From the NCBI GenBank assembly GCA_965637545.1, contig OZ281501.1, positions 7,254,001 to 7,318,000 on the forward strand: DNA of 64,000 nucleotides. Direction: 5' to 3'. Origin of the DNA: Phallusia mammillata. Its lineage: Eukaryota. The notes beneath the pieces were generated by a model. The model ran no database searches, was not told where the DNA came from, and worked only from the letters and a program-made list of their open reading frames with translations. Numbering within the stretch: position 1 is the first letter of the stretch; each line of letters starts with the position of its first letter. The translations under genes were made by a program, and so were the position numbers. Positions 22,801 to 48,262 of this stretch are shown here, piece after piece.

Positions 22801-25800
22801 TTGAATACGAGTACAGAGTGTCAGCTGAAAATGCAGCAGGCATTGGCAAACCAAGTCGCCCATCACAAGGAGCTTTCGCCCGCGACCCAGTGGATATTCC
22901 ACGTGAGGTTGAGGTAGCAGATATCACTCGCTCGACATGCTTGGTGCGCTGGAAGAAGCCTGAGTACGATGGAGGACAGAAAATTGTTGGATACATGGTG
23001 GAACGACGCGATCTGCCAGCAGGGCGTTGGACTCGGGCTAGCTTTAACATCATTCCAGACAACGAGTTTTTGGTAACTGGTCTGAACGGTGGGGCAGACT
23101 ACGAGTTCCGTGTTTTGGCCAAGAACGCAGCAGGAATCTTTAGCGAGGCATCTGCCAGCACAGGGGCTGTGAAATGCGAGGATGACTTCCGTCCTCCAAG
23201 GATTGCCCTGGATGCACATCTCCTTGATGAAGTCAAGGTCTCTGCTGGATCCACCATCCGTCTTCACGTTGGAATCTCTGGCAAGCCGGATCCGATTGTC
23301 GTTTGGTCTCTAAATGGCCAAGATATCCGAGAGGATTTCAGACGCGTATTCGACAACACATTCGACCACAGCAGCATCATTATCAAAGACTGTGCCCGAA
23401 ACGATTCTGGCAATTACACTGTAATGGCAAAGAACGCTTGTGGTGAGAAATCAGCTCAGATCAAGGTTATGGTACTGGACAAGCCTGGACCACCAACGGG
23501 ACCAATCCACTTCTCAAGGATCACAGATGCTCGCATAACTTGTTCTTGGGAAGCACCGCAACAAGATGGCGGCGCCAAGATTACGCATTACGTCCTGTCC
23601 AAGCGTGAAACATCCCGCCTAGCTTGGTCGATTGTAACCGAAGCCGAGGAGCTGTCAACTCACACAGTACAGAGACTTATCAAGGGCAATGAATACCAAT
23701 TCCGCGTACAAGCTGTAAACAAGTTTGGAGTGGGTGACCCTCTTGATTCGGAACCAGTCGTTGCCAAGAACAGCTTTGTTGAACCTAGCGCACCTGGTGT
23801 ACCAGATGTAAGCAACGTCTGTCGCGACAGTTGTACAGTGATGTGGAAGCGACCTGAAAGCGATGGTGGAGCCGATATTGACCAATACGTGCTGGAGAGG
23901 CGAGAACGCAAGAGCTCCCGATGGATCAAGTGCAGCAAGAAGCCAATTCGCGACTTGCGCTTGAAGGTCACCAACCTTACCGAAGGAAACGAGTATGAAT
24001 TCAGAGTTGCTGCAGAAAACGCTGCCGGCATTGGAGCTTACAGCCCTCTATCTCTTCCAACCATAATGCGCGATCCAATTGACGTTCCAGGACCGCCCAG
24101 CAGTCCAAAGGTTCGTGATACAACGAAATCGTCGATTCTTCTTGCTTGGACCCGACCACCATATGACGGCGGAAGCCCTGTGATTGGGTACTTGCTTGAG
24201 ATGAAAATCGGCGAGAAAGAACAAATTGAAGAACAGGAAGACGAGGCTGCATCCGTTGCCGCCGATGAGAAAGGTTGGACAGTTGTGCAGCCAAATATCT
24301 TGCACACAAAATACGAGGTAGAAAAACTCAACAACGACACCGCTTATCGTTTCCGGGTTTCTGCAATCAACAAGGGAGGAGTTGGCGAGCCGGCTGAGAT
24401 CTCAGAAGCAGTTAAACCAATTGACAAGCTTGAATCGCCCGATTACGACCTTGAGCCTTTGTTGCGTAAAACTCTTGTCGTCAAAGCTGGAACTACTATT
24501 AACGTCAGTATACCAGTGAAAGGAAGACCGACGCCGAGCGTGAAGTGGACCAAGGACAACACGAACATTACTACGAATCCACGCGTACATGTCGATAACG
24601 TCGATGGAAAGACCATTGTCGTGATTCAAGACTGCAACCGGGATGATACTGGAAAATATGCATTGTCACTTGAGAATGCAAGCGGCGTTGCTAATACCTT
24701 TATCAGTGTTCGGGTCCTTGATACTCCAGGGGCACCATTTGCGATCAAAATCAAAAAGGTGACGCAACAGTATGCGATTATTACTTGGGATGCTCCAGTC
24801 GTTGATGGTGGATCTGACGTTTTCAACTATTGCGTTGATAAACGTGAGACTACCCACCGCGCATGGTCGTCAGTGACTCGCCAATGCACCAAGCTGTCTT
24901 ACAAGATCGAAGGTCTGAACAAGGGAAGTAGTTATTTCTTCCGCGTGATGGCTGAAAACGAAAGGGGAGTTGGTGTTCCTGTTGAATCCGAAGCTGTTGT
25001 TGCAACCGAAGTGCCAGCACCAATCAATGATTTACGCATTGAAGACATGACAAATAGTTCGATCTCATTGGCTTGGGGAAAACCAGACGCTGATGGCGGA
25101 ACACCAATCACAGCTTACCACATCGGTTACTTGATTAAGGGTGCCGAGGAATGGCAAACCATGAAGACCAGACACACCAAAGCCACTGTTGATGATTTGA
25201 AGAAGGACAGCAAGTACGAGTTACGGGTTGCAGCTGAAAATGAAGCTGGCCTTGGTGAATGGAGCGCCGTTGGTCCAGTAGCTGTACGTGAGCAGTTAAT
25301 TCCACCTGAAGCAGATTTCAGTTCGATTCCAGGACGTACCATTAACATGCGCGAGGGCGGCAACCTAAGACTTGACATTCCGTTTTATGGCAAACCGATC
25401 CCATCCGTGAAATGGAGCAAAGAGCGTATTCCATTGAAGCAGAGTGATCACGTTGCTTATGAGCGATCCAAGGACGTCGCAATGTTGGTGATGAAGAATG
25501 TAAAGAAGACTGACGCTGGTCAATACTTCTTGCATCTTGAAAGCGCCGGCGGTCGCAAGGATAATTCCTTTACTCTCAACGTCTACGGAAATCCTGGTCC
25601 AATTAAGGGCCTGATTGAGTTCCCAGAGATCAGCGCTGAGAGTATTGTTCTTAAATGGTGTCCTCCAGAAGACAACGGAGGCTCAGAGATCACAAACTAC
25701 ATCATCGAGAAGAGGGAAACATCCAGCGATGTTTGGTCTTCTGTCAACGCCAACTGCAGCAGGACCACAGTCAAGGCCACAAAACTGCATCCAAATACAG

Positions 25801-28800
25801 AGTACGTATTCCGCGTTGCCGCTGAGAACAAGTACGGCATGGGAGAGTTCTCTGAATCAATGGATGTTGTCGCCAAGTATCCATTCCGCGTTCCAACTGC
25901 TCCAGGACAGCCAGAAGTTGTTGAGATGACTGCAGACTCCATGAACATCATGTGGAAGGAATGCCACTCTGATGGCGGCTCTGAAATTCTTGGTTATCAC
26001 ATTGAACGCAAGGAGCGCAATGCTATCCTTTGGACCAAGCTTAACCAATCAGCTATTAAGAACCGAGAATACAAAGCGAACGGGCTTACTGAAGGCTTGG
26101 AGTACCAATTCCGCGTTTATGCTGAGAATCAAGCTGGTATAAGCGGCCCAAGTGACGCAAGCAAACCAGAACGTGCCCACAATGTGGTTAGCCCACCATC
26201 ATGCCCTGATTGGACCGACATCACACGTGACACTGTGACGTTGATCTGGCAGCCACCGAAGTCTGACGGCGGAAGCAAAATCATCGGTTACAACATTGAG
26301 AAGCGGTCGGGTGAAGACGGTCGATGGTTGAAGTGCAACTACACAAATGTTCAGGAGTGCGAGTTCACAGCAACGGCGTTAAACATGGGCGAAAAATACC
26401 AGTTCCGCGTATTTGCGCGTAACGCCACCGGTACAGTCAGCAAACCGTCGATACCAAGCGCCGAGATCGTTTGCAGAGATGACTTCCAGCCGCCAAACAT
26501 TCAACTTGAAGCTGATCTTTATGATGGAGTCAACATACGCGCTGGCGCTACACTGAGGCTAAAGGCCATGGTAACGGGCAAACCAGCACCACGCATTACA
26601 TGGACTCTCAACGACAAGGAGGTTGTTGCCAATGCACAGGTTGACATTAACAACCAGAAAAACACCAGTCAAGTTACAGTTAAGGATACGACCAGGCTAA
26701 ACAGCGGAACATACGTGATTTCAGCGAGAAATCCATGCGCTACCAAGACCATGGACATCAAAGTAGTGGTTTTTGACAAACCGGGACCACCCGAAGGACC
26801 AATCAAATTTACATCACTGACACAAGATAAGGTTACTCTTTGGTGGGGAAGCCCGAAGGAAACCGGAGGCGCTTTGATTGACAACTACGTTATCGAGAAG
26901 CGCGAGACCACAAGACTAAACTGGTCATTGGTTACTGCAAGCTGTGGCTCCAACAATTTGACTGTCAACCGGTTGATCAAAAACCACGAGTACCAGTTCC
27001 GCGTTTCTGCGCAGAACAAGTACGGAGTAGGTGCCCCATTGCTGTCAGATGCCGTTGTTGCCAAGGTCTCATACACCGTACCTTCACCGCCTGGACAACC
27101 TCAATACTCGAGCTCAAGTGTTGATTCCATTACAGTCGCTTTCACAAGACCAGTTAGCGATGGCGGTAACGAGATTATCGGATACAACGTTGAACGACGG
27201 GAAAAGAAGAGCATGCGTTGGGTGCGCGTCAACAAGAGGCCTGTCACCGAACTTCGATGCAAAGCTACAGGACTTACTGAAGGCGGGGAATACGAATTCC
27301 GCGTTATGGCTGAAAATGCAGCTGGCTTAAGCAAGCCAAGTGAAACATCTTCTTTGATCGTATGCCGTGAACCGATTAGCCCACCAGCAGCTCCAGGCAT
27401 CGCTCGAATCACTGACACTACACGCAGTACAGTGGCTTTGACGTGGACGCCACCAAATTACGACGGGGGCAGTCATGTTACCGGGTATGTTGTTGAGGCA
27501 AAGAAGTACATTGCTGACGAGGAGCAGACTGATGGTAATGAGTGGATCAGAATGAACCCCGAAACAATCAGATCATGCGAATACGTGTTACCTAACCTAG
27601 AACCAGGCGCCGAGTACAACCTTCGTGTTCGGGCAATGAACGCTGGAGGACTTGGAGACCCAACAACAGTTTCGGGCAAGGTTATGGCTACGGACAAGCT
27701 TGAGGCTCCTGATTTCCAGATCGATGCTGATTTCAAGTCTCACTACGTCGTCCGAGCTGGAGCCGCTCTCCGGTTGTTTGTTCTTTACCACGGAAGACCT
27801 ACTCCTAATGTGAGTTGGTCTAAACCTGATGTGGAACTTCAAGACCGCGCTGAGATACAGACGACCGGATACAGTACTTTGTTGTTGATCAACTCCACAA
27901 CCAGAGATGATTCAGGCAAATATACACTTACCCTGGAGAACAGCACTGGCGAAAAGAAACTGCACATGACTGTAAAGGTATTGGATACACCTGGAGAGGT
28001 TGGGGCCATTAAATGCAAGGAAGTCACACGCAACAGCGTTACACTTGCTTGGGACTCACCTCTTATTGACGGCGGAGCGATGGTCAAGAACTACATCGTA
28101 GAAAAGAGAGAAGTGTCACGACGCAGCTGGCAGACCGTGGCCACTAAGTGTTCACGAACATCGTTCAAGGTTACCAAGCTGCAGGAAGGCACGACTTACC
28201 TGTTCAGGATTCTACCGGAAAATGAATACGGAGTCGGAGAGCCGCGTGAGACCGAAACACCGATCACCGTCACAGAAGTGCCAGGAATCCCAGAGCGTGT
28301 TGATATTGCTGAGGTTAGTATTCAATGCCCTTAACTTAAATCAAAATAGATTTAAGCTGAGTGTTTCGCTATGATATAAAACATATTGCTTTTTATCACA
28401 GGTTACAAAAAACACCGTTTCATTGTCCTGGCGTAAACCAGAGTACGATGGTGGAAGCAGGATCAATTCCTACATCATCGAGCTTTCGGAGAAGGGATCC
28501 AACAAGTTTTCGGAATGCGGAAGGGTTAAGGGAACTGTTTTCCGCCACACAGTCACCAACTTGCACGAGGGTGCTGAGTACGAATTCCGCGTGGGGGCAA
28601 GGAACGAAGCTGGAATTGGTGAAGCAAGAGATGCTTTCTCTTCTGTGATCACGAAGGACGAACAAGGTAAATATCTGCACTGCGCACAACTGAACGATGT
28701 AAATTTCTTCCGTTACATAGCAATAACACCTATATTTTGTCTTAGTGCTTCCTGAAGCTGACTTGAAAGGAATCTACCACAGGACAGTGACCGTAAAAGC

Positions 28801-31800
28801 TGGTGCTGCAATCGACGTTAGCGTTCCAATTGTAGGAAAACCGGCACCAACTGTTAGCTGGAAGGCTTCTGGTCGGGCACTTAAGAAGGGAGGGCGCGTG
28901 TGTATGGTAACTAAGGATGACACAACATCACTGACTATTAAAGACTCAAAGAAAACAGATGCAGGAGAATACGTGCTTAGCCTAGAGAACTCGGTCGGAG
29001 AGAAGAGCTACAAACTCAGTGTGGTTGTACTTGGTAAGTCTAAATTTAAACAAGGCTATTTACTGAGAAGTTGATTAAATCAAAACCACATTGCCTATTG
29101 GTTTCCACATAGTAATTGATGTTGTTATTTCCTCAGACATTCCCGGAGCGCCAACCGGTCCGATTAACTTTACGGAGGTTACTGCTGACAGCATTACGAT
29201 TTCGTGGGCTCCCCCACAGGATACTGGAGGAAGCGAAATTACCAACTACGCTGTGGATTACCGAGAGTTTGGACGTGCAACCTGGTCCAACGTGACCTCG
29301 TGTACAACAAGAACATTTATAAAGGTTCGTGCTCGGATTAGCTTACGATTTTACAAATCTTTAATAACACAATATAAGCATATTAATTACCGCTATGAAC
29401 TATATGCAGGTGGGAAAGCTTCAACGCAATACTGAGTATCAGTTCCGCGTCATAGCCGAAAGCAAGTACGGCATTGGTGAACCTTTAGTTTCCGAAATTT
29501 GCAGAGCAGACTACCAATACAGTAAGAAGCGTTCTGTCCTTAATTATTATGCCCATTCCGTCCTAATAAACTGTAAACAATTATCTTCAGCCGTACCAAG
29601 GCAACCTGGAACGCCTGGAATCACAGCGGTGACACGTGACACAGTGGCAATCAGCTGGAACGAGCCGACACACGACGGAGGTAGCGCAGTGACCGGGTAC
29701 TACGTTGAAAAGAAGGAAAAGAACTCAATTCTATGGCAGAGAGACAGTGATAAGCCAACGCCCAACAGATCATACACATGCAAAGGTAAGGCTCCGCAGT
29801 TCGAATTGTACGATATAGTGATTAAAACGTATGTAAACCATAGACCAAAAACTAATCGTATTTATGTCAACAGGATTGCTTGAAGGCTTGGAATACCAAT
29901 TCCGAATTGTGGCTGAAAACGAGGCTGGCCTTAGTAAACCTGGTGAGGCAAGCCGCCCTGTCGAAGTAATCAGTGCAGTCAGTGCACCGTACGATGTGGT
30001 CATCGACGACATCTCTCGTCACTCGGTCGTTTTGCGCTGGAAGAAGCCGCTCGCCGATGGAGGCAGCAAGATCGCGTACTATAACATCGAAAGACGCCAT
30101 GTACCCGAAGGCAGATGGCTTAAATGCAATTTCACCAACGTCACCGAATGTGTGTTTGAGGTCACTGGACTTACACCAAATGATTCATACGAATTCCGTG
30201 TGACTGCTCGCAATGCGATTGGTACCGTTGGGCAACCATCGGATGTTCTTGGGCCGATTGTGTGCAAGCCCAAGTATAAACCACCATCGATTGACATGGA
30301 CAGCAAATTCATGTCGGATGTTGTCCAGATTCGCGCTGGCAATACACTGCGACTCGATGCTGAAATATCAGGAAAACCACAACCGAACGTGTTTTGGTCC
30401 AAGGGAGAAACCGATCTTGAAGATACTGATCACATGACCATCGTGACCTCACCAACGTCCACTGCACTGATCATAAAGGACGTGACTCGTGATGATAGCG
30501 CCCGCTACGCCCTATTGTTGCGTAATGAATGCGGTGAGAAGAGGACGACCATCAACGTTAAGGTCCTTGACAAACCAGGACAGCCTAAAGGTCCAGTAGT
30601 GTTTAGCCGCGTCAGTGCTGAGAAATGCAATTTGTCGTGGGAAAGACCAGTTGAAGACGGAGGTGCTGATATCACCCATTACGTGGTGGAAAAGCGTGAA
30701 ACTTCTAGGATCAGCTGGATTGCTGTCAACGAAAACCTCGAACATACATCATGTACTGTGCCCAACTTAGTACCCAACAACGAGTACATCTTCCGCATTT
30801 CAGCAGTGAACAAGTACGGAAAAGGCTCACCTCTCGAGTCGGAGCCATTGGTAGCGAAGAACCAGTTCATTGCACCACAGGCACCAGGACAACCAGAGAT
30901 CGCAGCTACAACCAAAGACTCTGTAACCATTACATGGACCAGACCAACTTGTGACGGTGGAGCAAGCATCAAAAACTACGTGATTGAAAAACGTGACAAG
31001 CAAGGCCAGAGATGGATTCGCTGCAACAAACAGCAAGAAGTTACTGACCTTCGTTTCAAAGCTACCGGACTCCGCCACAAGGCTAAGATCGAGTTCAGAG
31101 TTGCGGCTGAAAATGCTGCTGGTCTTGGCGGCTTCAGTGAACCCAGTTCATACGCATGTGTCCAAGACCCAGTCTTTGCGCCGGCCGCTCCAAGTCATCT
31201 GCGAGTCGTGGATTCAACACGAAACAGCGTTAGCCTGGCATGGAACTCACCGCTATACGATGGTGGCAGCTCTGTCGATGGTTACATTGTGGAATGTACT
31301 GAGTCTATCGCCGACAAAGAGGACAATTGGATGAAGATGCACAAATCAAATCACATTCAGAACACAGAGTTTACCGTTACCGGCCTCAGAAATGGGCATG
31401 AGTACAAGTTCCGAGTCTACGCTGTTAACGTTAACGGTGTTAGTGAAGAAGCAGCAACTCTGAAGGAAGCAGTTGCCGCTAAAGATATAATCGAAGAACC
31501 TGAACTTGAAATCGACGATGCTTTCCGCAAAACTGTGAGTGTACACGCCGGTAAGCCCTTGCGCTTATACGTGCTCGTTAAGGGACGCCCAGCACCGACT
31601 GTCGCATGGTCGAAGGCTCCATACGGTGAGGACTTAAGCGCCAAGGCGTTCATCGAGACTCACGAGGCCGCAAGCCGCTTGGAAATCGAAAAGACCGATC
31701 GGTACGATGCTGGTAAATACACAATCTCGCTTGAGAACCAAAGCGGAAAGAAGGAGGCAACAATCAATGTGAGGATATACGATACACCAGGAAAGCCTGG

Positions 31801-34800
31801 ACCCATCAATATTCGCGAAGTGACCAGAAGCTCAATCTCTTTCGGCTGGGAAGCGCCTGAGATCGATGGTGGAAGCGCCATTCGCAACTATGTTGTAGAG
31901 AAACGTGAAGCTACTCGTCGAACATGGAGTACTGTTACAACCAAGTGCTCGAAGATGGGTTACAAGATTCCTGACCTCGTTGAGGGAGTAAGCTACTTTT
32001 TCCGAGTTCTAGCCGAAAATGAGTACGGAATCGGTGAAGGACGTGAAACCGAAACGGCGATTAAGATCTCCGAGCAACCTTCACCACCAGCTGTGGTCGA
32101 AGCCACTGATGTCACAGCTAGCACTGTCACATTGGCGTGGGAGCGACCAGAACAAGATGGCGGATCTCGAATTGAAGGATACGTCGTCGAGATGATGGAA
32201 AAGGGCACAGACAAGTGGCTGAAGGTCGGAAACACCAAAGACCAAAGCTTCACCGTAAAGGGATTGAAAACTGGCTTGGATTACTACTTCAGAGTTAAAG
32301 CCAAGAATGATAGCGGACTTGGTGAGGCACGCGAAATGCTTTCATCGGTTACTGTGAAAGAACAACTCGTTGCCCCTGAGGTCGACATGACAAGCTTACC
32401 ACAGAAGACTCTTAACGTGAAGGCGGGATCTCCAATTGTACTTAAACTGCCAATTGTCGGCCGACCTGCGCCAACAGTTGCATGGACCAAGGACAATAAC
32501 GAAATTAAAGAAGATCTAAAAAGGACCACTATTAAGTCCACCGACTCCAATGCTTCGTTGGAGATCCGTGAATCAACTGTTGAGGATCGTGGCGACTACC
32601 GTCTTACGCTGACCAACTCCTCAGGCACTTGCACTCAGCTCATTCGAGTTGTGGTCCTTGATGTGCCACTGGCTCCGCAAGGACCGGCTGAGGTTTCGGA
32701 CATCACGGCAACTTCTGTAGTGCTGCATTGGAAACCACCCCAGTACGATGGCGGTGCGACGCTTAGCAACTACGTAGTTGAAAAGCGAGAAAGCCACAGG
32801 CCAAACTGGGTGACTGTCAGCTCCACCGTTACCAGAACAACCATTAAGATTACTCGTCTCAATGAGGATACTGAGTATATGTTCCGTGTAATGGCACAGA
32901 ATCGTTTTGGAGTCGGCAAAGCTTTGACATCTGAAGAGATCGTTGTAAAGAGTCAGTTTGGTCTTCCAGGAGCACCAGGAACGCCACAGATTACTTCATG
33001 CAGCAAGGACAGCATGACAGTCATTTGGATGGAACAAGTAAATGATGGCGGTGCCGAGATCACTGGCTACATTGTTGAAAGGAAAGAACCGAAGTCTTCA
33101 CGTTGGATCAGAGCCACCAGAACGCCAGTGACCCAAACAAGATTTGTCAGCAGCGGTCTCATCGAGGGTGTTGAGTACGTGCACAGAGTCATCGCTATAA
33201 ACGCAAAGGGGGAAGGAAAACCAAGCAAAGACACGGAACCAAGGACATGTCAAGAACCAGTTGTACCACCGGGTGCACCAAGAAATCCTCGCATTGTTGA
33301 CGTGACGAAGGCAACATTGTCCGTCGCATGGGAAAAACCAGAGTTCGAAGGAGGTTCCAAGATACTTGGATACTACATCGAGATGCGAAAGGATGACACC
33401 TGGTGGGAGAAATGCAACACCACACCGATTCGTATCACCGAGTACACTTTGAAGGGTCTCCCAGAAGGCGGCGAGTACTACCTTCGCGTTCTAGCATTGA
33501 ATGCAGGAGGAACAGGACAGGCTTCTGAAATCCAGAAGCCGGTTGTTATCCGAGACATGAGCGGACCTCCAGAGGTGCTGGATACGTTTGTTGATCACGT
33601 AGTAGCACGCACCGGTGGTGTTGTGCGTCTCTTGGTGCCGTTTAAGTGCCGCCCGTCACCACATGTCGAGTGGAAAAAGATTAGCGGTACTGAAGCGGAC
33701 TTGAACATCCGTGCCATGACTGCAATTCAAGCTGAATCTGCTGAGCTTGTCATGAAGGGCGTTGACCGTCGAGATGCAGGCGAATACCGAGCTTTGCTTA
33801 CAAACAAACTTGGCGAGAAGGAAGTTACAATCCACCTTCAAGTAATCGGCAAGCCCGACGCACCAGAGGGCCCAATGCAGTTTGGCGAGATTGAAGCGAC
33901 ATCAGTGAAACTTGTGTGGAAGCCGGTGCTCGATAACGGAGGCAGCGAAGTGACCAACTACGCTGTAGAAAGACGCGAAGTCAGCAAGACCGCTTGGTTT
34001 ACCGTCGATTCCAAAATCAGAGCAACACACTGCACGGTTAAAGGTCTAACTGAAGGCCGTGAATACTACTTCAAAGTTTACGCCGAGAACGCATTCGGGC
34101 TTGGAGAGCCTTTACAGAACCCCGATCCCGTTGTACCCAAGAACCCACTATTTGCACCGCAGCCACCACAGATTGTTGAACTCAATGAGGTTCGCAAAGA
34201 TCGCGTATTTTTGTCTTGGCCACGAACCCGCGACGACGGTGGTTCACGCGTCACTGGATACTTTGTCGAGCGCCGCGAAGCTGGATCGGAAAGATGGGTT
34301 CGAGTTAACAAGGTACTCACCAAAAATCTTTCCTTCGTGGTGCAGGGATTGGTCGAAGACGCGGAGTACCAGTTCCGCGTTGTCGCTCTCAACGATGTCG
34401 GAGAAGGCGAGCCTTCAGAACCAACTGAGATCGTCGCTTGTAAAGATCCCTTCGATAAGCCTTCATCACCAGAAGACGTAGAGGTTCATCATATTACAAA
34501 GGATTCCATCACTCTTGCCTGGAGCAAACCAGAATTTGATGGAGGCAAGGGCATTCAGGGTTATATTATCGAGCACCGCGAATATGGAATGACTTTGTGG
34601 AAGCAGAGTCACGAAGATATGATCCGCGATCGCATTTACCAGATTGGAGGTTTGGACCAAGGCGCTGAGTACGAGTTTAGACTCTACTCTGTCAACGAGC
34701 AAGGACGTTCGCGCCCAAGAGCTTTGGAAGCGCCTGTGGCGACAAAGAAGGCGGCAGGAGAGAAGCCTGAGATTCTTAAGCCTCTTGACACTACCACCGC

Positions 34801-37800
34801 GGTTCGTGATACAACCGGAGTCCTAACTTGTCAGGTTTCAGGACGACCTCTTCCGGATATCTCATGGATTCGATTCGGCAAAGAGCTTCAGAGCGGCAGA
34901 AAATACAAGATGTCTTCTGAGGGCCAGGTCAACTCGCTTCATATTCAAAATGTCACAGACGAAGACGAAGGCGGGTACCACATGGTTGCCAAAAACAACG
35001 TTGGAACACTGGATGTTGAAGGCACTTTGGTTGTCGAGGGCGTTCCTATTCTTGATGACAGCAACATGCGTTTCAAGGATAGGGTTACAGCTAAGCACGG
35101 CCAGACCTTGCGTATCCATGTTCCATACAAGGGCAGACCAATTGCACAGGCAATTTGGACTAAAGAGGGTCGCCGTTTTGAGAAGAGCGAACGACATGAA
35201 ATTGAAACAACTGACAACTACACTCACTTGCTTGTTAAGTCTGCTGATAGAAACAAGGACACCGGCAAGTACATGGTGAAGCTGAACAACGCTCACGGCC
35301 ACAACACCTATCCCATTGAAGTCGAGATCCAAGATGTTCCATCTAAAGTACAAGATATCCAGGTGTCCAATGTTACTTTGAACAGCATGGTACTGACATG
35401 GAAGGAGCCACTTGACAATGGCGGTGCTCCAGTGTCAAACTACATCATTGAAAAACGTGACATTGAAGACGATGAAAATAGGTGGACTTTGGTGACATCG
35501 AACACAGCTCAGACATCATACAAGGTTGGCAGGTTGATTGAGAAACACGCGTACTACTTCCGAATCTCAGCTGAAAACTGCTTCGGTGTCTCACAAGCAC
35601 AGGAGTCTGACTGTCCGACGGCAGCTAAACCACCACACGATGTGCCACAGAAACCGAGTCAGCCCGTAGCAACAGGAGTGTCCAAGGAAGGCTGTATGCT
35701 CAACTGGAAGCAGCCCAAGACCGATGGTGGCAGTAGGATTTCAAACTACGTCGTGCAACGTCGCGACAACCGTCGCCCGAGATGGATGAAGATTAACAGC
35801 GAAACGTTGACTCAATCTGTTTATCAAGTGACAGGACTAGTGGAAGGAATTACCTACGAATTCCGCGTCATCGCAGAAAACTCCGCCGGGGCATCGGAAC
35901 CATCGGATGTATCCGAACAGGTTGTGCCAAAAGACGACATCCGAGTCACTAAGCCAAAGTTTGTTGAAAGCCTTCGAGACTTAGTGCTTAAACCGAACCA
36001 GAACGCAACATTTAGTTGCAAGATTTCAGGACAACCAAAGCCTATTGTGAAGTGGTACAAGGGAGGGCGCGAGATTTCGGGCTGCCCGAAATATCAGATG
36101 CATGAAGGCAAGGGCAACCATTACTCATTGGTTATTTCTGATGTTACTGCTGCTGATGAGTTACCATACACCGTGAGGGCTACCAACCATGGCGGCTCAA
36201 TCTCAGCTACAGTGCAGTTGGATGTTCAGCTTCCAGCGCAAGTTAACTTGCCGAAGTACATGATGTCAGAGGCAACAGTTTGCAAGGTGCACGAAGTCGT
36301 AAGCATCAAGGTGCCCATTCAAGGAAAACCTATGCCAGATGTTACTTGGACAAAGGCTGGAAAGGTTGTGAGCCAAGACGCTCACAGGCAATTCATCACA
36401 ACACCGTCCTTTACATCAATGACCATCACCAACGCAGACCGCCGTGATTCTGGATTCTACAACATCACTGTAAAGAACCGATTTGGCACACATCAAGCCA
36501 CAGTAGAACTTCTGGTCGGCGATGTTCCATCGCGGCCAGAGGCATTGAAGGTTTCTGGCGTGACTCGCGATTCGGTCGATTTGTCGTGGAAGGAGCCTTC
36601 CGATGATGGCGGCAAGCCGGTCTTGAAATATATCATCGAGAAGAGCACTGTGTCAAGCGATAGATGGATGAAGGTTTCATCTTCAAGCACCTGTCACTAC
36701 ACCGTATGTAACCTTTCAGGCAAGACCAGCTACGAATTCCGAGTATTGGCTGAAAACGAGTACGGCCAAAGCAAACCTTCACAAGCGTGTGATCCAATCA
36801 CCACCAAGGAGGATCGCATGATGGCAGGCAACTACGATGACATGGTCGACGCCACTGAGAAGTTCGTACCCGGTTTGGCTGAGGTCTACAAATCCAACGT
36901 GCTCGACAAATATCAGATCATGGAAGAACTCGGTCGTGGTACCTTTGGAGTTGTGCATAGAGCCAAGGAGATCCTCACTGGCAAAATATGGGCAGTGAAG
37001 ATTTGTCGCTTCTCGGACGAGTCGGACAAGGCTCCAGTGCTACGTGAAGCTGAGATTATGAGGAAACTACAGCATCCACGAGTCCTGCAACTTCACGAAG
37101 TCTTCAATGTAAAGGGCGAAACATCTTTGGTTGTTCAGTTTGTGTCAGGAGGCGATCTGCTTGAGAGGGTCACTGGTCCTATGTTCGATCTCACTGAAAA
37201 CATGTGTGTATACTTGCTGAAGCAAGTGTGCGAAGCCCTTGCCTTTGTGCACTCGCAAAAAATCGCTCATCTGGATATTAAGCCGGAGAACATCCTCTTT
37301 ATGACACGTAGAAGCAAAAAGATCAAGCTCATCGACTTTGGTGTTTCACGTCAGCTCAAAACTGGCGAAGGTGCGAATGATATAAATTACTAATGTGTTA
37401 AAATATTGTTTAATGTAACAAAGGCGTTATGTGCATACAACAGCTTTTCGTATTTACAACCAAAAATATACACTATTTATCTCTTATTAGGACTAAGAAT
37501 CGCATTCGGAACACCTGAGTTCTGCGCCCCAGAAGTTGTTCAAAACGACACGGTCGGATGCTCAACCGATATGTGGTCTCTTGGTGTTATCACTTACTTA
37601 TTGCTCACTGGAGTGTCACCGTTCCATGGTGAAAACGACAGCGATACGTTAAAGAACGTAGCCGAGGCCGATTGGACTTTTGACCGAGAGGAGTTCGGCT
37701 TGGTGTCTGATGATGCCCTGGACTTTATTGACAGGTGAGTAATTTAGCTATACCCTGATACTGGTTGAATTTTTATCCTGTTGAATGCTAATTGCAACAT

Positions 37801-40800
37801 GCCTTAATTTACATGCCAGCTTCTTCATAATTTGCTCTTTGTACTTTAGGTTGCTAGTCAAGGAGAAGAAGGAGAGAATGACAGCTGACGACGCTTTGCA
37901 ACATCCATGGATGCGCACTTTGCATCCCGAGGTCGATGAGGATCTGATGGAGCGAAGATCGGTAATCATTCAAACCACACAACATCGCAAGTTTTACCAA
38001 ACCATTAAGAAGCAGGATGTGTCTACGGTTATCGTGTCTCTTGGTCGCTACGCTTCTGGTGGAGCCATGCGCTCCCTCAAGGGAAAATCTGTGGCCAAGG
38101 TCAAGGTTGAGCCTGTGGACATGACACCTCATCTCATGCCAATGCATCATGTCTTTGTGAAAGAGAGTGATGACGCGAAGATCATTTGCCGTATCAAGGA
38201 CGCTGACGACAATGAGACTGTAACTTGGTAAGCATTTATTTCCTCAAGAGATATACTAAACTTACAATGTAAAACCCTTTAAATATTTTCTTGATTATCT
38301 TTTAAAATTATCCGTTAATAAATGCCGTTCTTTGTGCTCTTTAGGTACAAGGACAATATCAAGCTTGACGACGAAGACAAGTATGAATTCGGTTACGATC
38401 AACATACGGGCGCAGCATCACTTTATGTGAAGGGTGTAGTGAGATCGGACGACGGAAGCTACAAGTGCCGAGTCGAAAATGCGTTTGGTGTCAACTCGCA
38501 AACTTGCGAACTTTGCGTGGAACTTAAGAACAGGTCGGTTGGACACCTATACAAAAAATTGCAACAAATTGCAGTTGTAGCTATATATAAATACAATACA
38601 TAACCTTGGTTATTGTCACAGAGAATGGACTCGAACCCGCCGCAGCATCTACTTGAACAAGCACAAGAAGAGAGGCAAGCGCAGTGGAGCAGAAGACATC
38701 TCCAGGATCATCAAGTCGCCTCCAGAGTTTACTCTACCACTCTACAACAGAAGCGTGTACGTTGGAGATCCAGCCATCTTCACAATAACAGTCACTGTTC
38801 ATCCGACGCCTGAAATCACATGGTTCCACAACGGACAGAAGGTCAAGGCCACGGATGATTCAAACTACAGTGTAACGAAGGAGAAGGGACTCTACACACT
38901 ACAGATTAGGGACTGTCAGGCGGAAGACAACGGCGATGTCACTGTGACTGCCAGAAACGCCTATGGTGAAGATGAATGCAAGGCTACTCTGACAGTGCAA
39001 CGTACGTAGCAATAGATATAAATTCTGATATTTAGGCAGTACTTGAAAATCTAATATATTGCTGCAATAAAATATATTCAAGTTTTTAACAATTGGTTTT
39101 CTACTGCAGCAAAACCGGTCAAAGAGGACTTGAGCGTTCGTCCAATGTTCCGAAGGTTGCTTGCAAACCAAGAGGTAGAGGAAGGTGATAATGCGCGATT
39201 TGATATTCGCGTTACCGGATTCCCCAAACCTGTTGTTGAATGGTACGTACAATCCACTAGCACTGTTACCTTTCTAAGGCAGGAGTTTAACGTGTCTTTT
39301 AACATCAGGGAGAAGGACGGCAAGCCGATTCGATCAGACCACCATCACGATATTGAGTGGGAAGATAAACATTCATGCTACTTGCTGATTCGGGACACAT
39401 TCCAACAGGACAGCGGCCAGTACAAGGTTACTGCTAAGAACTCAGCCGGCACAGCCAGTTGCCAAGCAACACTACAAGTTCAGCCGTTAGCGTACAGGAA
39501 ACGCAAGAAGTAAGTGTACAAAAGAAATTGCGTCAAACTTTGTTTCCACCCCTATTAGAAATTGCTAACCCGCAATTTTCTCTTCAAGACCACAACAAGA
39601 CGCAGATCTATTCGCACGCGAAAAGGCTTACAAGATGGCAGACAAGCTTTCAATGCTTCAAGGCGACGCCGTTGATGTAAGGATGAACGCATCAGCGAAA
39701 GAGGCTCTTCTGAGCGCCTCTACTCAGAGCTCGTTTTTCCGACAACCGGTTACAGACGACGAGGCCAAGCAGGAGAAGGAAGAGCGGAGAAGAGCCAAAG
39801 AGCGAGATCTTAACCTCAGGATGCCCTACGACGTCCCGGAACCAATCCAACGTTCGGAGAAGTCCCTTAAAGAAGATACGACTCTTAAGAGCTTCGTGCC
39901 TTTGAGTGACTTCAAGTGGTACAAGAAAGTCCAGCAATCGAATGAGGCTTACGTTCCGACCGATATCTCACGCGATGAAAGGCGAAGTCGTCGATTGAAG
40001 AGACAGTTTGTGCCAGACGTGGCCTACATTGTCCCCGACAAACGCTACGGATCAACTACAAGGTACGGTTCACTACATCATAAATCCAAATATTATTGTA
40101 ATCGAAAAAGCCAAGATATGTTTTGCTTGTAATATTTTACACAGTGGAAATATGAAAGTCATTTTGTTCACAGACGTGACATGCAAATGCGCACAATCGA
40201 TGACGTACTTGGTGATGGCATGATGCAGCAGCGTGACAGGAGCTTGTCACCTGATGAAGACGAGATCGTACTTCAAAGGAAAGAACGCTCCCGCATTCCC
40301 AAACGCATGAGTCCAATTCCTTTCAAGCAACCTAAATGGCAGCAGTACTACAAACCAATGGCTGATGACGACGAGGTAAGATACCTTAACCGAGTCCGTT
40401 ACGATATACATTTAACTGAATTTACATTTTATTTAATATCATATTTTTCAAACAGGTTTTGCGCCCTGTGCGAGATTACCTTGAAAATGCATCTGCCAAG
40501 GAGTATGTACAGGAAATGGAATCAAGAGGCATCGAAGAGCGTGCCGATGGGTTAAAAAGTTACGCTGATCTGCTCAGGGAACAAAGAGAGTCGTCTTTGG
40601 AAACTGGACAGGTGCAGGAGAAGTACGAGTACCGACCAGTAAAAGTGCCAAAGAAGGCTGATGCTTCACCGTCATATGTGTCGCTTCGGGGACGCCACGA
40701 TCAGGCTTTGATGTCAAAGAAGTACTCAACGTAAGATTTGTTCCTTTAAACTAAAATCATTTTGAACAAAATTAATACATATAGTTGATGCTTTGTACTG

Positions 40801-43800
40801 ATGGGACTTGTTCTTACCCAAACTTTATTTGTTTTAGAACTGAAGAAACTTACACCAAGCCGGAATCTGACGATGAACTCTTGCGGCCGATCTCGCTCGA
40901 TGCTTGGAAGTACGAGCAAGTAAAACATGATGAGGCTTCTACATCCCGGGCAGTCAAACCCCGGCGTCCGTTATCACCGTCCTCTTCTTCTGAGAGCGAT
41001 GGCGAAAAGGAATACAGGAGGAAGAAGCAAGAGCGCGAGAGACGACGTCAGGAGGATTACTCCATGGAGATGGAAGAGTATGAAAGCCTTCAGCAGTCCT
41101 CCAGACAGAAGAAGTCGCGCAGGAAGAGGGTTGATGAAGAACCGGAATATATGCAGAAGCTCAGAAGGAGAAGGTGCTTAAAAATGAACAGTTTGCAACA
41201 TAATAACCCCTTAATTGTCGTTTGTATTTTAATGATGAGAGTATTCAATGTTTAGTAATTTGTATTTGTTGTAGATCTTTCGAATATGAAGAGCTGATGC
41301 GACCTATTACGGAGGTTGTTCTCCAGAAGAGGAGACGACGACCTGTGTCTTCATCTTCATCATCATCAGACAGCAGCAGTGACGACGAAGAATACCGCAG
41401 ACAACAACGTCAACTGAGAAAATCACGCAAATCCAGGTAACACAAACTTCCAACCCGACCCCAAACTCACAACATTCCACCACATACATTTGCCCGCAAT
41501 ATTACACATATATTTGCCCGCAATATTAACCTATATGTTTATCTTTAGACGCCATTACGACGAATACGAAGAAGACCTTTCCTCCGGTATCGAGTTTACA
41601 AGCTCCAAGTTGAAGCGTGAAACGAGTTACGGAGGAGTAAGCAGAAATGCAGCGGACTATGCACCAACTTTCCAGCTACGTATGAGATCACACGTGGTCC
41701 CGGAAGGCATGAGCACGAAGCTGAGCGCATATGTCCGCGGTCGACCAGAACCCAAGATCACTTGGTACAGAAATGGAACCGAGCTGACACCAGGTGGCAG
41801 CAAATACTACATCAGTAACATCGGAGGTAAGAATTCAGCTTCTACAGTTTGAGAAATTCTATGTTGTGAAGTTCAGGGTAGACTATATTGGTTGCCTGTA
41901 GCTACTGGTAACACGGAATATGTGACTTTTGCAGGTGTGACATCACTTGAGATCGTGCGTTGTCACGAAGGAGACAGTGGAACCTACCGTTGCTCTGCAA
42001 GAAACTCGAGAGGCGAAGTGTCGGATTATGCTACTCTTGAGGTCACTGGATCTGAATTTGAGTCAAGCGCATCCAAGCGAGGCGTTGACCAATTCCACAT
42101 GACTATGGAAAGAGTCGACGCAAGAACTGCTCTGTCAAGGTAAATAACCACACCTGTTGAAATTACCACTTGCAGTTGACTAGATTTTTAACCTTTTCCT
42201 ATTGTTTTAGGGCCGAGACAACTACAGAAAGGGACTTTTACTCGCGGGCGTCAATCCAATCAGAGGTACAACCTGCTTCCAGAACATCCACTTACAGTGA
42301 ATACGGTGCAGACAGCCGAATGGGAGGTGTCACACCATCATCTATGACTGGTGCACCGTACTTCGTCATTCAACCGAAAAGCCAATATGTGATGGAGGGA
42401 GACAACGTAATGTTTACAACACAATGCGATGGCAAACCTTCACCAAAAGGTTAGTTAAGTTTATATTGTGTTTGTATTTTGAAACTTACGAGTATAACGA
42501 ACTTTGTCAAATTGGCATTTGGCACTGAAAAAAAACATGTTTTAATCTTGATCTGTTTTGGCAGTGACTTGGTACCACGACGACCGCCAGATTCGTGAAA
42601 GTGAGAAATACACGCTGGGCGCTTCAAGAGGCAAGCGAACATTCGAAATCCGAAATGCAAACGTCGCCGACATCGGTCAATACAAATGTGTGGCCGAGTC
42701 CAGCAAAGGATCAGCGGTGTCTGACTTTACTCTTGACGTCACTGCCCGTCGTCGCCCAGTATCGTCGGCAGCATCGGCATACGAGCGAACAACGCCACCG
42801 ATTAAGCTTGGTCGACAGGCAAGAGGTCCAGTGATCGTTGGACAACTCCATGTTGAGCTGCGATTGGATGGTACTGTTCATCTCGAATGCAGCGTTTCCA
42901 ATTCTGATGACGTAACTCGTGTGAGTTGGCGAAAAGACGGAACGCCTGTGAGGTAAGATATACACCAAGCACTAAGTTATAATTACCACTACGATATAGA
43001 GTTTTCTAAATGAATAATTTATCTGTTAGAACATCAAGTGAAAGAATCAGAGAAGCCAATTTCGGTTGCTCTTACTCTCTCATCATCCACGAGCTGCGCG
43101 AGGAAGACGCCGGCTTATACGAATGCGAGTTTACTGCTTCCAACGGAGCCATCTCCACTACCATTTGCACCATGTCGCGAGACTCTTGTGCAAGCATGCG
43201 CAAAAAGGTCTCAAAATTGGCTGGAGCTAGTGGACGCTCAAGCGCTTCTCCAATGAGCGGTTTGATGCAACACATGGAAAAATCAATGCAGCAAACGTCA
43301 CAGATTACATCGTTTTCATCGGAAAGTCGAGGATCTTCTGTAACATCAGCAAGAGGTAAATAAATAACACAATAACACTGTTAATTTTGTGTTAGCACAT
43401 GAAGCCGTGATTTTAACGTTCTCTTTTATTTTGCAGCAGCCCCGACCAAGATCGAAGCTCTTCCTGGATCAGTGACCGTCAGCAACGGGAAGGTACTTAC
43501 ACTGACCACTGCATTGTCCGGGCAAGGGCCTTGCGTTGCTGTGTGGTTTCATAACGGAATGACACTCAGGTAAATATTGGGCAGTGTAAATTTTGTGCCA
43601 TAGCGTAAAATCAATCGTTGCAGTATTCTAAACAAACTTGTATTTGTTACAGCGATGGAGACGATAGCGGCCGGATTCGACTTGAAAGCACGGATTCGTC
43701 AACTACACTAACAATTCTCGGCGCAAAGGCTTCGGACGCTGGAAAATACAGACTCGAAGTGGCCAGCCCAAAAGGATCAGACTCAGCCACTACCAACGTT

Positions 43801-43812: not shown

Positions 43813-44420
43813 ACCGGACTTAGCTGTTTTTTTTTGTACATACTGTAAATATTATGTTGTGAATTGTTTGGGGCAATGTCCTTTGCTTTAAGCAAATATG
43901 TATAGCGGATTGTCTTTACTAAACCACGTTCACCGATGGTGCCTACTTGCAAATCACTGCTATAGACGGATAAAAACGTCGAAACTTGTACAAAGAAACA
44001 ATGCTTTTCAAACCTTTACTTGACTGTGACATTTTATGACATGGAAATGTACTCTTGTCTATGATGCTGCCTTGCAAAGGCAACTATTTATGCTGACCTG
44101 TCACAATATGACATAGAACAATTAGTGCCTTGGCACATTGGTACGAAAGCTAGCTTACGAAAATGACAAACCAATAAGCGTTAATATCATCCCCTTGTCA
44201 GTCATCAAGGCCATGAGGTTAACGTTGTATTGGTGAATGCTGGTTGGTCAAAAAAAGCGCTTACCTTCAAATGTTATTAATTTATTGGGCTATTATACTG
44301 TTCATTTATTGATTTCACTTACATCTCAAAGTCATTCAACTGATTTTCCTACATTGTGTTTTCTGGCGATGTTCCTTCTTGCCAAATCCCCTTTATCGGC
44401 TGTTTCCGTTTAACGTGAGT

Positions 44421-44490
44421 TGACCGCCCGGTGGCGCCCCTGTCACATGATGTCTGTGTGACGTCATTATCCTCGCCATTTGTGACGTCA
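44421..44490. promoter_or_regulatory. CTCF-like motif followed by two CRE/ATF palindromes
   Basis: tgaccgcccggtggcgccc (44421-44439) resembles the CTCF core consensus. TGACGTCA occurs at 44459-44466 and 44483-44490, both in a GTGACGTCAT context, in a short GC-rich patch between titin and the next gene. Motif match only. Confidence 0.35.
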
Positions 44491-44847
44491 TCCACACGTA
44501 ATGACACTTGTTGGCCGGTTCTCGCCGCCGTTGTTTTTGTTTTATTTAGTATTTACAGCGCATGCCCCCAAAATTAATATTACACGTGAACGTGCATGTT
44601 ATCACTTTGTTTGGACAAGTTTGGAAATTTTAATAAACATCACTTGCAATCAATTACTTGTGTTTATAAAACATTCATTCAAAAAAAGTTATTTCAAGGA
44701 AATGAATCAAATAATCTAAATATAGGCAAACCAGTCGATAGTTATTGCAAAGGCTGTATGAACCAAAATTTCTTAAACTCACCAAGGTTCCAGTTTCAAA
44801 CTGGAATTTTCCGGCGAAAACTTACATAAAAAACAAAATCATAACAG

Positions 44848-45163
44848 AAAGGCTATAGCCTCAGGGTTATTTCAAAAATCGGTTAAAAATTTCGGTTTCC
44901 GAATCCGGTTTAAACCGTTGAGGAGGCAGAAACCGACTGAAGCCAGCTTGAAACTGGAGTATTTCGAAGAAAACACATTTAAAATCGGATTTGTTCATCC
45001 ACAAAAGTCGAATAAACGGAAAGGCTATAGCCTACGATTTTTTTTCAAAATTTTGGTCAAAATTTTGGTTCTACTTAGCCTCCTACCAACCCCCCAAACC
45101 GGTTAAACCAAAATCGAAAAACCAAATTTTTGACCCGATTTTCGAAAAAAGGCTACAGCCTTT
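44848..45163. repeat. MITE-like dispersed repeat bounded by AGGCTATAGCCT palindromes
   Basis: Ends are inverted (aaaggctatagcct...aaaaatcggttaaaaattt versus aaatttttgacccgattttcgaaaaaaggctacagccttt), with a third palindrome internally near 45022. An inverted homologue lies at 51101-51295. No TSD resolved. Confidence 0.6.
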
Positions 45164-48166: not shown

Positions 48167-48262
48167 GTTAAAACCGTTTTATCCGCCGATGGTAGGCTAC
48201 GTTGATGACCAAAAATCTCTTTAACAAACAACATTGCCATTTTACGCGAAACTTGTTCAATT

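What the first reader, a model, noticed from the sequence alone, without database searches (positions are those of the whole stretch)
36800..38118. Titin kinase with canonical catalytic motifs where vertebrate titin has a pseudokinase
Seen: WAVK, HLDIKPEN, DFG and P+1 loop GTPEF, together with the N-linker NYD motif (36830-36838) and a vertebrate-like C-terminal tail (GGAMRSLKGKSVAKVKV). Known: human titin kinase has MAK, HFDIRPEN, EFG and TAPEY(Y) and is regarded as catalytically inactive, whereas invertebrate twitchin kinases are active. Inference: this chordate titin may keep an active, tail-autoinhibited kinase, which would date pseudokinase conversion to the vertebrate lineage.
Basis: partly seen in the sequence, partly recalled or inferred. 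Interest (0 to 1): 0.72.

Follow-up and report, generated by a model that had tools for sequence, protein, structure and literature searches.

The report
Sea-squirt titin keeps a canonical kinase
This sea-squirt titin gene encodes an expressed kinase domain with every catalytic residue intact, unlike the degenerate titin "pseudokinase" of vertebrates. The loss therefore dates to the vertebrate stem, and tunicates offer a true titin in which kinase activity can be tested.

Summary
Window 36800-38118 encodes the N-linker, kinase and C-terminal regulatory tail of a tunicate titin orthologue. It lies in three exons, with introns at 37371-37490 and 37735-37849.

- **Sequence is real.** Spliced transcript contigs from three independent studies match the window letter for letter, so the AVK/DFG reading is not a sequencing error.
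- **It is titin.** Upstream lie 11-domain C-zone super-repeats and the vertebrate-type Ig-Ig-Fn3-Fn3-Ig-Ig-Fn3 block. The tail matches only titin among solved structures. The kinase is sister to vertebrate titin kinases (99/96 support).
- **Catalytic residues.** All canonical residues are present: GRGTFG, AVK, the helix-C Glu, HLDIKPEN, DFG, GTPEF/APE. The tail also has Leu at position -2 of R-7x-R, the state a 2026 study ties to active twitchin-type kinases. Six other ascidian genomes and Ciona savignyi share all of this.
- **Dating.** Hagfish titin already shows LAK, HFDIRPEN, EFG and Ala at -2. The MAK/EFG-type conversion therefore predates crown vertebrates.
- **Amphioxus.** A published alignment shows its connectin kinase with different lesions (K>T, D>H, N>S), which implies an independent loss. 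I did not verify this sequence.

Catalytic activity is inferred, not shown. The scan noted the same thing on a near-identical tandem copy 41.7 kb downstream (s1-405576).

The parts
10974..28331 (+). Giant A-band exon of the same titin gene, made of repeated 11-domain super-repeats (Ig-Fn3-Fn3-Ig-Fn3-Fn3-Fn3-Ig-Fn3-Fn3-Fn3), the vertebrate C-zone pattern.
   Evidence: Open frame of 5786 aa. The domain string is from self-trained Ig and Fn3 profiles.
29873..36526 (+). First part of the last A-band exon (29873-37370). It holds the end of the C-zone, then Ig-Ig-Fn3-Fn3-Ig-Ig, with the last Fn3 following. This is the vertebrate titin P-zone layout directly before the kinase.
   Evidence: Domain string ...IIFFIIF. 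The splice acceptor at 29872/29873 was read from the RNA loose end and the sequence.
36527..36799 (+). Last Fn3 domain before the kinase, the equivalent of human A170.
   Evidence: Pfam fn3 E=8.5e-16; domain map.
36800..36910 (+). N-terminal linker (NL) of the kinase. The YD anchor motif NYD lies at 36830-36838.
   Evidence: Aligns to the human titin NL (TKEDKTRAMNYDEEVDE) in 6YGN. The role of the YD motif is from PMC12862963.
36911..37370 (+). Kinase exon 1, running from the N-lobe to just past DFG. Motifs: GRGTFG 36932-36949, WAVK 36989-37000 (Ala 36992-36994, Lys 36998-37000), helix-C Glu 37046-37048, HLDIKPEN 37268-37291, DFG 37334-37342.
   Evidence: RNA contigs are identical.
37371..37490 (+). 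Intron, 120 nt, GT..AG.
   Evidence: Joint seen in transcript contigs of X6, X12 and X8; boundaries.
37491..37734 (+). Kinase exon 2, covering the activation segment, the P+1 loop and the C-lobe. Motifs: GTPEF 37508-37522, APE 37526-37534, DMWSLG 37568-37585.
   Evidence: Pfam Pkinase E=1.7e-14. Best solved-structure hits are MYLK4 and twitchin, ahead of human titin.
37735..37849 (+). Intron, 115 nt, GT..AG.
37850..37913 (+). Start of exon 3 and end of the kinase core, with the subdomain XI Arg in ERMTADDALQHPW (37872-37910).
37914..38108 (+). C-terminal regulatory tail (CRD). Helix R1 motif QHRKFY 37980-37997; Leu(-2)-Gly-Arg-7x-Arg 38040-38072; strand SVAKVKV 38088-38108.
   Evidence: Among solved structures this exon matches only titin: 6YGN 7.4e-22, 1TKI, 4JNW, and medaka TKb 9QJ2 at 2.9e-13. 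Twitchin does not appear. Motif definitions are from PMC12862963.
38109..38533 (+). First M-band Ig domain (M1-like), split by intron 38228-38344.
   Evidence: Aligns to human M1 in 6YGN; domain map; joints.
38622..41800 (+). M-band part. It contains a basic insertion, two Ig domains, a long charged Ser-rich insertion and a further Ig. The frame stays open through ten more GT..AG introns.

Best explanation
The region is the kinase module of an ascidian titin (connectin) orthologue. It is transcribed and spliced from three exons.

The module combines titin-type flanking tails with a fully canonical MLCK/twitchin-type catalytic core. The tails are an N-linker with a YD anchor and a C-terminal regulatory tail carrying QHRKFY, R-7x-R and SVAKVKV.

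It most likely works as twitchin kinase does (inferred):
- At rest the tail plugs the active site. Leu at position -2 sits in the adenine pocket against the small Ala of AVK.
- The first Arg bridges to hinge acidic residues.
- The second Arg contacts the catalytic Asp, because the P+1 loop has Phe rather than the human Tyr.
- The SVAKVKV strand pairs with the activation segment.
- Strain at the A-band/M-band junction pulls the tails off. The kinase can then bind ATP-Mg and phosphorylate Ser/Thr substrates.

Shown here: the gene structure, its expression, its orthology to titin, the presence and conservation of all catalytic residues, and the hagfish pseudokinase state. Inferred: catalytic activity, tail autoinhibition and mechanical release.
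For: - **Sequence and splicing.**
- **Kinase identity.** Pkinase E=2.1e-39. Titin 6YGN and twitchin 1KOA are the best solved relatives.
- **Tail.** It matches only titin among solved structures.
- **Architecture.** C-zone super-repeats, then IIFFIIF, kinase and M-band Ig domains.
- **Tree.** Tunicate plus vertebrate titin kinases form a clade at 99/96. That clade is sister to twitchin plus ambulacrarian twitchin-like kinases at 100/98.
- **Conservation.** In six independent ascidian genomes, 56% of kinase columns are invariant, yet all 20 catalytic-core key positions are. Leu(-2), both Arg residues and the YD motif are invariant too. Two Ciona-type proteins (P0002, P0008) carry the same motifs where their models cover them.
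- **Published covariation rule.** AxK with DFG and Leu/Ile at -2 marks active kinases. A bulky residue before xK with EFG and a small residue at -2 marks the pseudokinase (PMC12862963).
- **Sufficiency of the vertebrate changes.** Putting Met or Glu into twitchin kinase abolishes its activity (PMC4042850).
- **Hagfish.** Hagfish titin has the pseudokinase state.
Against: - No biochemical data exist for any tunicate titin kinase.
- Canonical motifs are necessary but not sufficient for activity. Human TK with E147D alone stayed inactive (PMC4042850).
- I could not fold the spliced protein with the tools on hand, so tail docking rests on alignment to solved homologues.
- The helix R1 motif is only partly titin-like (QHRKFY against [R/K]H[R/K]RYY).
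- A divergent plankton tunicate-like sequence (P0219) has Tyr for the His of HxD and Arg for the Gly of the P+1 loop. The catalytic constraint may therefore not be uniform across tunicates.
Confidence: 0.7

Rival explanations
1. The domain looks canonical but works mainly or only as a mechanosensitive scaffold, as vertebrate titin kinase does. Phosphotransfer would be negligible or physiologically irrelevant. The catalytic residues would be kept for structural reasons or for nucleotide binding alone.
For: - The tails, the M-band context and the SVAKVKV strand are titin-like.
- Vertebrate TK functions as a scaffold (PMC4042850, PMC12862963).
- Restoring Asp in human TK did not restore activity.
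- Two other lineages appear to have dispensed with catalysis, which suggests the non-catalytic role is the essential one. These are amphioxus and the crinoid twitchin-like P0191, which reads HLALKPQN.
Against: - All 20 catalytic-core key positions, including the catalytic-loop Lys and Asn, the DFG Asp and the P+1 Thr, are invariant across ascidians that are only 69-90% identical in the kinase core.
- Pseudokinases normally drift at exactly these sites, as the vertebrate, amphioxus and crinoid sequences do.
- The Ala/Leu(-2) pairing matches the active class.
Confidence: 0.22
2. The gene is not the titin orthologue. It would be a twitchin/projectin-type paralogue whose canonical kinase is expected, so nothing could be said about titin evolution.
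For: - Exon 2 scores slightly higher against MYLK4 and twitchin than against human titin.
- Exon 1 scores about equally against titin and twitchin.
Against: - The tree places it with vertebrate titin kinases at 99/96.
- The tail matches titin only.
- 11-domain super-repeats and the IIFFIIF block precede the kinase, and M-band Ig domains with insertions follow it.
- The closest named protein is Ciona savignyi titin.
- The higher exon 2 score for twitchin is explained by the long vertebrate stem branch, 0.66.
Confidence: 0.03
3. The canonical motifs are an assembly or sequencing artefact, or they belong to an unexpressed duplicate.
For: A second, 99.8% identical copy lies 41.7 kb downstream. The locus is therefore structurally complex.
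Against: - Three transcript assemblies from different studies and one DNA assembly reproduce the window sequence through the kinase.
- At the two coding sites where the copies differ, 37645 and 37996, all three transcript contigs carry the window's letter.
- Seven other ascidian assemblies have the same motifs.
Confidence: 0.02

Closest known systems
Vertebrate titin kinase (human 1TKI/4JNW/6YGN; medaka TKb 9QJ2; hagfish titin A0A8C4QLJ7)
   Same: - It is the orthologue by tree.
- It has the same position in the protein: Ig-Ig-Fn3-Fn3-Ig-Ig-Fn3, then kinase, then Ig M1.
- It has the same tail elements: the YD anchor, an HR[KR]-type helix R1 motif, R-7x-R and [ST][VI]AK[VA]K[VI].
- Among solved structures the tail matches only these.
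   Different: - Window AVK, against MAK or LAK.
- Window HLDIKPEN, against HFDIRPEN.
- Window DFG, against EFG or ELG.
- Window GTPEF, against TAPEY or TAAEY.
- Window Leu at -2, against Ala or Ser.
- Window QHRKFY, against RH[RK]RYY.

The vertebrate proteins are regarded as pseudokinase scaffolds (PMC4042850, PMC12862963).
Twitchin kinase (C. elegans 1KOA/3UTO, Aplysia 1KOB), with projectin and TTN-1 kinases
   Same: - Canonical AxK, HLDxKPEN, DFG and a GT/AT P+1 loop.
- Leu or Ile at -2 of R-7x-R.
- A YD anchor.
- Experimentally active and inhibited by their own tails. This is the working model adopted here.
   Different: - They fall in a separate clade.
- The tail sequence is not recognisably similar; there is no hit at E<=1e-3.
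- The host proteins lack the titin C-zone, P-zone and M-band architecture.
Amphioxus connectin kinase (Bf_CON, XP_035661587.1; supplementary alignment of PMC12198301)
   Same: It is the kinase of the titin/connectin gene of another invertebrate chordate, and it retains DFG.
   Different: - It reads FAAT in place of AxK, so the Lys is lost.
- It reads HLHLRPES in place of HxDxKxxN, so the catalytic Asp and the Asn are lost.
- It reads ISAEF in the P+1 loop.

This is a differently degenerated pseudokinase. It was read from a published alignment and not verified here.
Myosin light-chain kinases (for example human MYLK4, 2X4F)
   Same: The C-lobe and P+1 loop are very similar. MYLK4 is the best hit for exon 2, at 7.6e-24. 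All catalytic motifs are the same.
   Different: They form a different clade. They have calmodulin-regulated tails, no YD linker and no titin tail.

Membership tests
Titin/connectin orthologue | A-band C-zone built of 11-domain super-repeats, Ig-Fn3-Fn3-Ig-Fn3-Fn3-Fn3-Ig-Fn3-Fn3-Fn3 | tested here: met
   The string IFFIFFFIFFF is repeated along exon 10974-28331.
Titin/connectin orthologue | Ig-Ig-Fn3-Fn3-Ig-Ig-Fn3 immediately before the kinase, and Ig domains with unique insertions after it (M-band) | tested here: met
   Fn3 by Pfam. M1 aligns to 6YGN.
Titin/connectin orthologue | Kinase groups with vertebrate titin kinases rather than with twitchin or MLCK | tested here: met
   Clade support 99/96.
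Titin-like kinases (TK, TwcK, projectin, TTN-1) | YD anchor motif in the N-terminal linker | tested here: met
   NYD at 36830-36838, aligned to human NYD. YD is invariant in every tunicate sequence that covers the linker.
Titin-like kinases (TK, TwcK, projectin, TTN-1) | R-7x-R motif in the C-terminal regulatory tail | tested here: met
   RYASGGAMR at 38046-38072. It is conserved in the five other ascidian loci that include exon 3.
Catalytically competent eukaryotic protein kinase | GxGxxG loop, AxK Lys with a small first residue, and the helix-C Glu | tested here: met
   GRGTFG, W-A-V-K, and the Glu of REAEIM.
Catalytically competent eukaryotic protein kinase | HxDxKxxN catalytic loop and the DFG Mg-binding motif | tested here: met
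   HLDIKPEN and DFG. Both are invariant in the ascidians.
Catalytically competent eukaryotic protein kinase | GT..APE P+1/activation segment, the subdomain IX Asp and the subdomain XI Arg | tested here: met
   GTPEFCAPE, DMWSLG and ERMTA.
Catalytically competent eukaryotic protein kinase | Measured ATP binding and phosphotransfer | not testable with these tools
   Needs recombinant protein.
Vertebrate titin pseudokinase signature (PMC12862963) | [quoted passage not shown] | tested here: not met
   The window has Ala (WAVK). Hagfish has LAK and the fish representatives have MAK or MVK.
Vertebrate titin pseudokinase signature (PMC12862963) | Glu in place of the DFG Asp (EFG or ELG) | tested here: not met
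   The window has DFG at 37334-37342.
Vertebrate titin pseudokinase signature (PMC12862963) | Small residue (Gly or Ala) at position -2 of R-7x-R | tested here: not met
   The window has Leu (SLGR), against human and hagfish AAR.
Vertebrate titin pseudokinase signature (PMC12862963) | [R/K]H[R/K]RYY motif in helix R1 | tested here: inconclusive
   The window has QHRKFY, which matches 3 of 6 positions exactly. The ascidian loci have HRKF[YH].

The most novel reading that the evidence does not exclude
Tunicates are the only chordate subphylum whose titin still carries a working, mechanically gated kinase. Catalysis would then have been lost twice independently: in cephalochordates (K>T, D>H, N>S) and on the vertebrate stem (Ala>Met/Leu, Asp>Glu, with a compensating small residue in the tail). 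If so, Ciona-type ascidians would be the one system where the ancestral substrates and the force-activated phosphotransfer of a true titin can be found by genetics and biochemistry.
Probability: 0.45. Interest if true: 0.65.

Novelty: new member of a known kind. Interest (0 to 1): 0.5.

Why it matters
Whether titin's only enzymatic domain ever transfers phosphate has been argued for about 30 years. The current view is that vertebrate titin kinase is a pseudokinase scaffold, while invertebrate titin-like kinases (twitchin, projectin, TTN-1) are active. Those invertebrate proteins are not titin orthologues.

This locus shows that a bona fide titin, with vertebrate-type A-band and M-band architecture and vertebrate-type kinase tails, keeps the full catalytic set in the sister group of vertebrates. 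Hagfish already has the degenerate set. This brackets the conversion to the vertebrate stem. It also offers a tractable organism group in which to test force-gated titin phosphotransfer and to search for substrates.

The amphioxus data, if confirmed, add a second and independent loss. That would suggest the catalytic function is dispensable relative to the scaffold function.

No paper in the searchable library discusses the catalytic motifs of tunicate or amphioxus titin kinase.

Tried and rejected
- **Regex domain map.** A regular-expression map of Ig/Fn3 order was too leaky. I replaced it with self-trained profiles.
- **Closed papers.** The two primary papers on ascidian and amphioxus connectin (PubMed 22245513 and 21510959) are not held. 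I cannot exclude that they show the kinase motifs.
- **Amphioxus and lamprey sequences.** Neither could be fetched.
  - The word search is limited by length, and searches returned none.
  - The exhaustive search ranked multi-kinase proteins high, and its best 150 held no amphioxus titin.
  - I left the third word search unused, because divergent amphioxus words and an unknown protein length made success unlikely.
- **Structure prediction.** The spliced protein has no single reference in the window. The only full-length proxy, Ciona savignyi P0002, has gene-model gaps in the tail, and P0219 is divergent.
- **Organism names.** The names behind the six ENA/JGI ascidian-like contigs are not given by the tools.
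- **Twitchin-paralogue and artefact readings.** Both were considered and rejected; see the rival explanations.


Full report
**What is there.**
- The window is G000:C8:7254001-7318000 of a 240-Mb genome.
- From 36800 the frame of a 2509-codon open stretch reads TTKEDRMMAGNYDD..., runs through a protein kinase, and breaks just after DFG.
- Pfam Pkinase scores E=2.1e-39 on this exon and 1.7e-14 on the next. The preceding 100 codons are an Fn3 domain at 8.5e-16.
- The best solved-structure relatives of exon 1 are human titin 6YGN (1.5e-42) and C. elegans twitchin 1KOA (7.5e-42). The alignment to titin starts in the N-terminal linker, at TKED..NYD.

**Gene model and expression.**
- I laid Logan contigs of four runs on 36300-41800.
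- Three runs from three studies (X6, X12, X8) each hold one long contig that skips twelve GT..AG introns. Two of them are 37371-37490 and 37735-37849, inside the kinase.
- These three contigs differ from the window at no letter. They are spliced, so they derive from RNA.
- A DNA contig (X1) is collinear and differs only at 37645 (T>G, Asp/Glu).
- The spliced frame stays open for 1365 codons. In order it encodes: Fn3, linker, kinase, regulatory tail, Ig, a basic insertion, Ig, Ig, a long charged Ser-rich insertion, Ig.
- The AVK/DFG reading is therefore neither a sequencing error nor a pseudo-exon.

**It is titin, not twitchin.**
- Profiles trained on the window's own Ig and Fn3 domains give repeated IFFIFFFIFFF units in exon 10974-28331, then IIFFIIF directly before the kinase. 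From my own knowledge of titin, these are the vertebrate C-zone super-repeat and P-zone.
- The exon holding the tail matches only titins among all solved chains: 6YGN 7.4e-22, 1TKI, 4JNW, and medaka TKb 9QJ2 at 2.9e-13. Twitchin is absent at E<=1e-3.
- The closest named protein is Ciona savignyi titin, 76% identical over exon 1. The organism is therefore an ascidian.
- A maximum-likelihood tree of 29 kinase modules puts window, Ciona and a plankton tunicate-like sequence in one clade (99/96). That clade is sister to a vertebrate titin clade (100/100), and the two join at 99/96. Their sister is twitchin plus ambulacrarian twitchin-like kinases (100/98).
- The vertebrate stem branch is long, at 0.66. 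This explains why exon 2 scores a little better against MYLK4 and twitchin than against human titin.

**Catalytic state.**

| Position | Window | Human titin kinase |
|---|---|---|
| Gly-rich loop | GRGTFG | not compared |
| AxK motif | WAVK | YMAK |
| Helix-C Glu | present (REAEIM) | not compared |
| Catalytic loop | HLDIKPEN | HFDIRPEN |
| Mg-binding motif | DFG | EFG |
| P+1 loop | GTPEFCAPE | TAPEYYAPE |
| Subdomain IX | DMWSLG | not compared |
| Subdomain XI | Arg present | not compared |

- Human states are.
- The 2026 study of Dorendorf, Gravenhorst and Mayans defines the pseudokinase signature as three features: a bulky residue before xK, EFG, and a small residue at position -2 of the tail motif R-7x-R. 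It reports that active twitchin, TTN-1 and projectin kinases have AxK, DFG and Leu/Ile at -2. The reason given is that this tail residue packs on the AxK residue inside the ATP pocket.
- The window tail reads S-L-G-R-YASGGAM-R, with Leu at -2. Human has AAR and medaka b has AAR. All three diagnostic positions are thus in the active state.
- Bogomolovas et al. 2014 showed that putting Met or Glu into twitchin kinase abolishes activity. They proposed an invertebrate-active, vertebrate-inactive dichotomy, but they sampled only twitchin, TTN-1 and projectin.

**Conservation.**
- Eight tunicate-type proteins from the word search all have AxK, HLDxKP[ED]N and DFG.
- I fetched six of their contigs and found the same three-exon structure. 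Where the exons are present, they read GTP[ED]F, APE, HRKF[YH], SLGRYA[SA]GG..R and S[VI]AKVK[VI].
- Among six independent genomes that are 69-90% identical in the kinase core, 56% of columns are invariant, but all 20 catalytic-core key positions are. A naive chance estimate is about 1e-5.
- A divergent plankton transcript (P0219) keeps Lys, Asp, Asn and DFG. It has Val-x-Lys, Tyr for the His of HxD, and Arg for the P+1 Gly.

**Dating the conversion.**
- The exhaustive search returned a protein named titin of the hagfish Eptatretus burgeri.
- It reads YLAK, HFDIRPEN, EFG, TAAEYFAPE, RHRRYY, A-A-R-7x-R and TVAKVKV.
- The fish representatives read MAK or MVK with ELG or EMG.
- Hemichordate, mollusc, arthropod, nematode and rotifer twitchin-type kinases and the MLCKs are all AxK plus DFG.
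- With the tree, one change on the vertebrate stem explains the MAK/EFG-type state. That change falls after the split from tunicates and before the cyclostome-gnathostome split.

**Amphioxus.**
- The supplementary kinase alignment of Hanashima et al. 2025 contains Bf_CON (XP_035661587.1).
- It reads FAAT where others have AxK, HLHLRPES where others have HxDxKxxN, DFG, and ISAEF in the P+1 loop.
- That paper does not comment on this; the word pseudokinase does not occur in it.
- If the gene model is right, amphioxus titin kinase lost the essential Lys, Asp and Asn by a different route. Tunicates would then be the only chordates with a canonical titin kinase.
- I could not verify this sequence.

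**Mechanism and confidence.**
- By homology to solved titin and twitchin kinase structures, the module should be autoinhibited by its tails and opened by strain.
- Because it has the ATP- and Mg-binding residues, it should then phosphorylate substrates, as twitchin kinase does.
- I put 0.7 on this and 0.22 on a scaffold-only role despite canonical residues. Little is left for the paralogue or artefact readings.

**Novelty.**
- Related Ciona sequences are public, and the invertebrate/vertebrate dichotomy was proposed in 2014.
- I found no paper that examines a tunicate titin kinase.
- I class it as a new member of a known kind. It has moderate interest because it makes an old question testable.
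- The scan flagged the same feature on the tandem copy downstream (s1-405576).

Noticed in passing
window 51511-64000 and beyond (G000:C8:7332532-7333850 = L002): There is a second, partial titin copy in tandem.
- 51511-52640 and 54623-54927 match 2569-3680 and 5023-5321 at only 86-87% identity.
- 54929-64000 matches 13191-22268 at 98.8%.
- Its kinase is 99.8% identical to this one, with 5 differences in 3 kb.

The mosaic of old and near-identical parts argues for a real duplicate with recent gene conversion rather than an assembly artefact. The copy 2 kinase differs by Asp>Glu (37645 equivalent) and by Tyr>Cys in the helix R1 motif (QHRKFC). All three transcript contigs carry the copy 1 letters at both sites.
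   Followed up: partly
window 29873-29893 joined to 36731: In runs X6 and X12 a loose end before 36731 reads ...ACATGCAAAG|GATTGCTTGAAGGCTTGGAA. That is exon end 29785 spliced to 29873-29893, then continuing at 36731. It would be an in-frame skip of 6837 nt between two Fn3 EGLEY(Q/E)FR motifs, without GT..AG ends. It could be a template-switch or assembly chimera, a structural allele, or a shortened isoform. It is unresolved, and my one read-laying run was already used.
   Followed up: partly
window 37645: A T/G polymorphism (Asp/Glu in GENDS[D/E]TLKNV) is seen in DNA run X1 and in copy 2. Twitchin has Glu at this position.
   Followed up: yes
window 44000-51500: A low-GC stretch (35-38%, against 45-50% in the titin exons) separates the end of copy 1 from the start of copy 2. 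It was not examined.
   Followed up: no
P0191 (Anneissia japonica twitchin-like, XP_033116214.1), residues 4197-4476: The catalytic loop reads HLALKPQN, with the catalytic Asp replaced by Ala, while DFG is kept. This may be an independent pseudokinase conversion in a crinoid twitchin-like protein.
   Followed up: no
P0219 (MERC plankton transcript, 515 aa): This is a divergent tunicate-clade titin kinase with tails and an M1 Ig domain. It reads YVAK, YLDLKPTN, DFG, RTPDF and V-A-K-7x-R. It is probably from a pelagic tunicate, and it shows that the catalytic loop is less constrained there.
   Followed up: partly
P0065 (Hucho hucho, 706 aa): One short gene model holds two titin-kinase-like domains. 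One of them reads HFEIKPDN and ETG. It probably merges the tandem ttna and ttnb genes, or it is a degenerate extra copy.
   Followed up: no
window 39589-41436 (spliced M-band insertion): This is a long, highly charged insertion with Ser runs (SSSSSSSDSSSDDEE, PLSPSSSSESDGEKEY) and Arg/Lys/Glu-rich stretches. It recalls the phosphorylatable M-band insertions of vertebrate titin.
   Followed up: no
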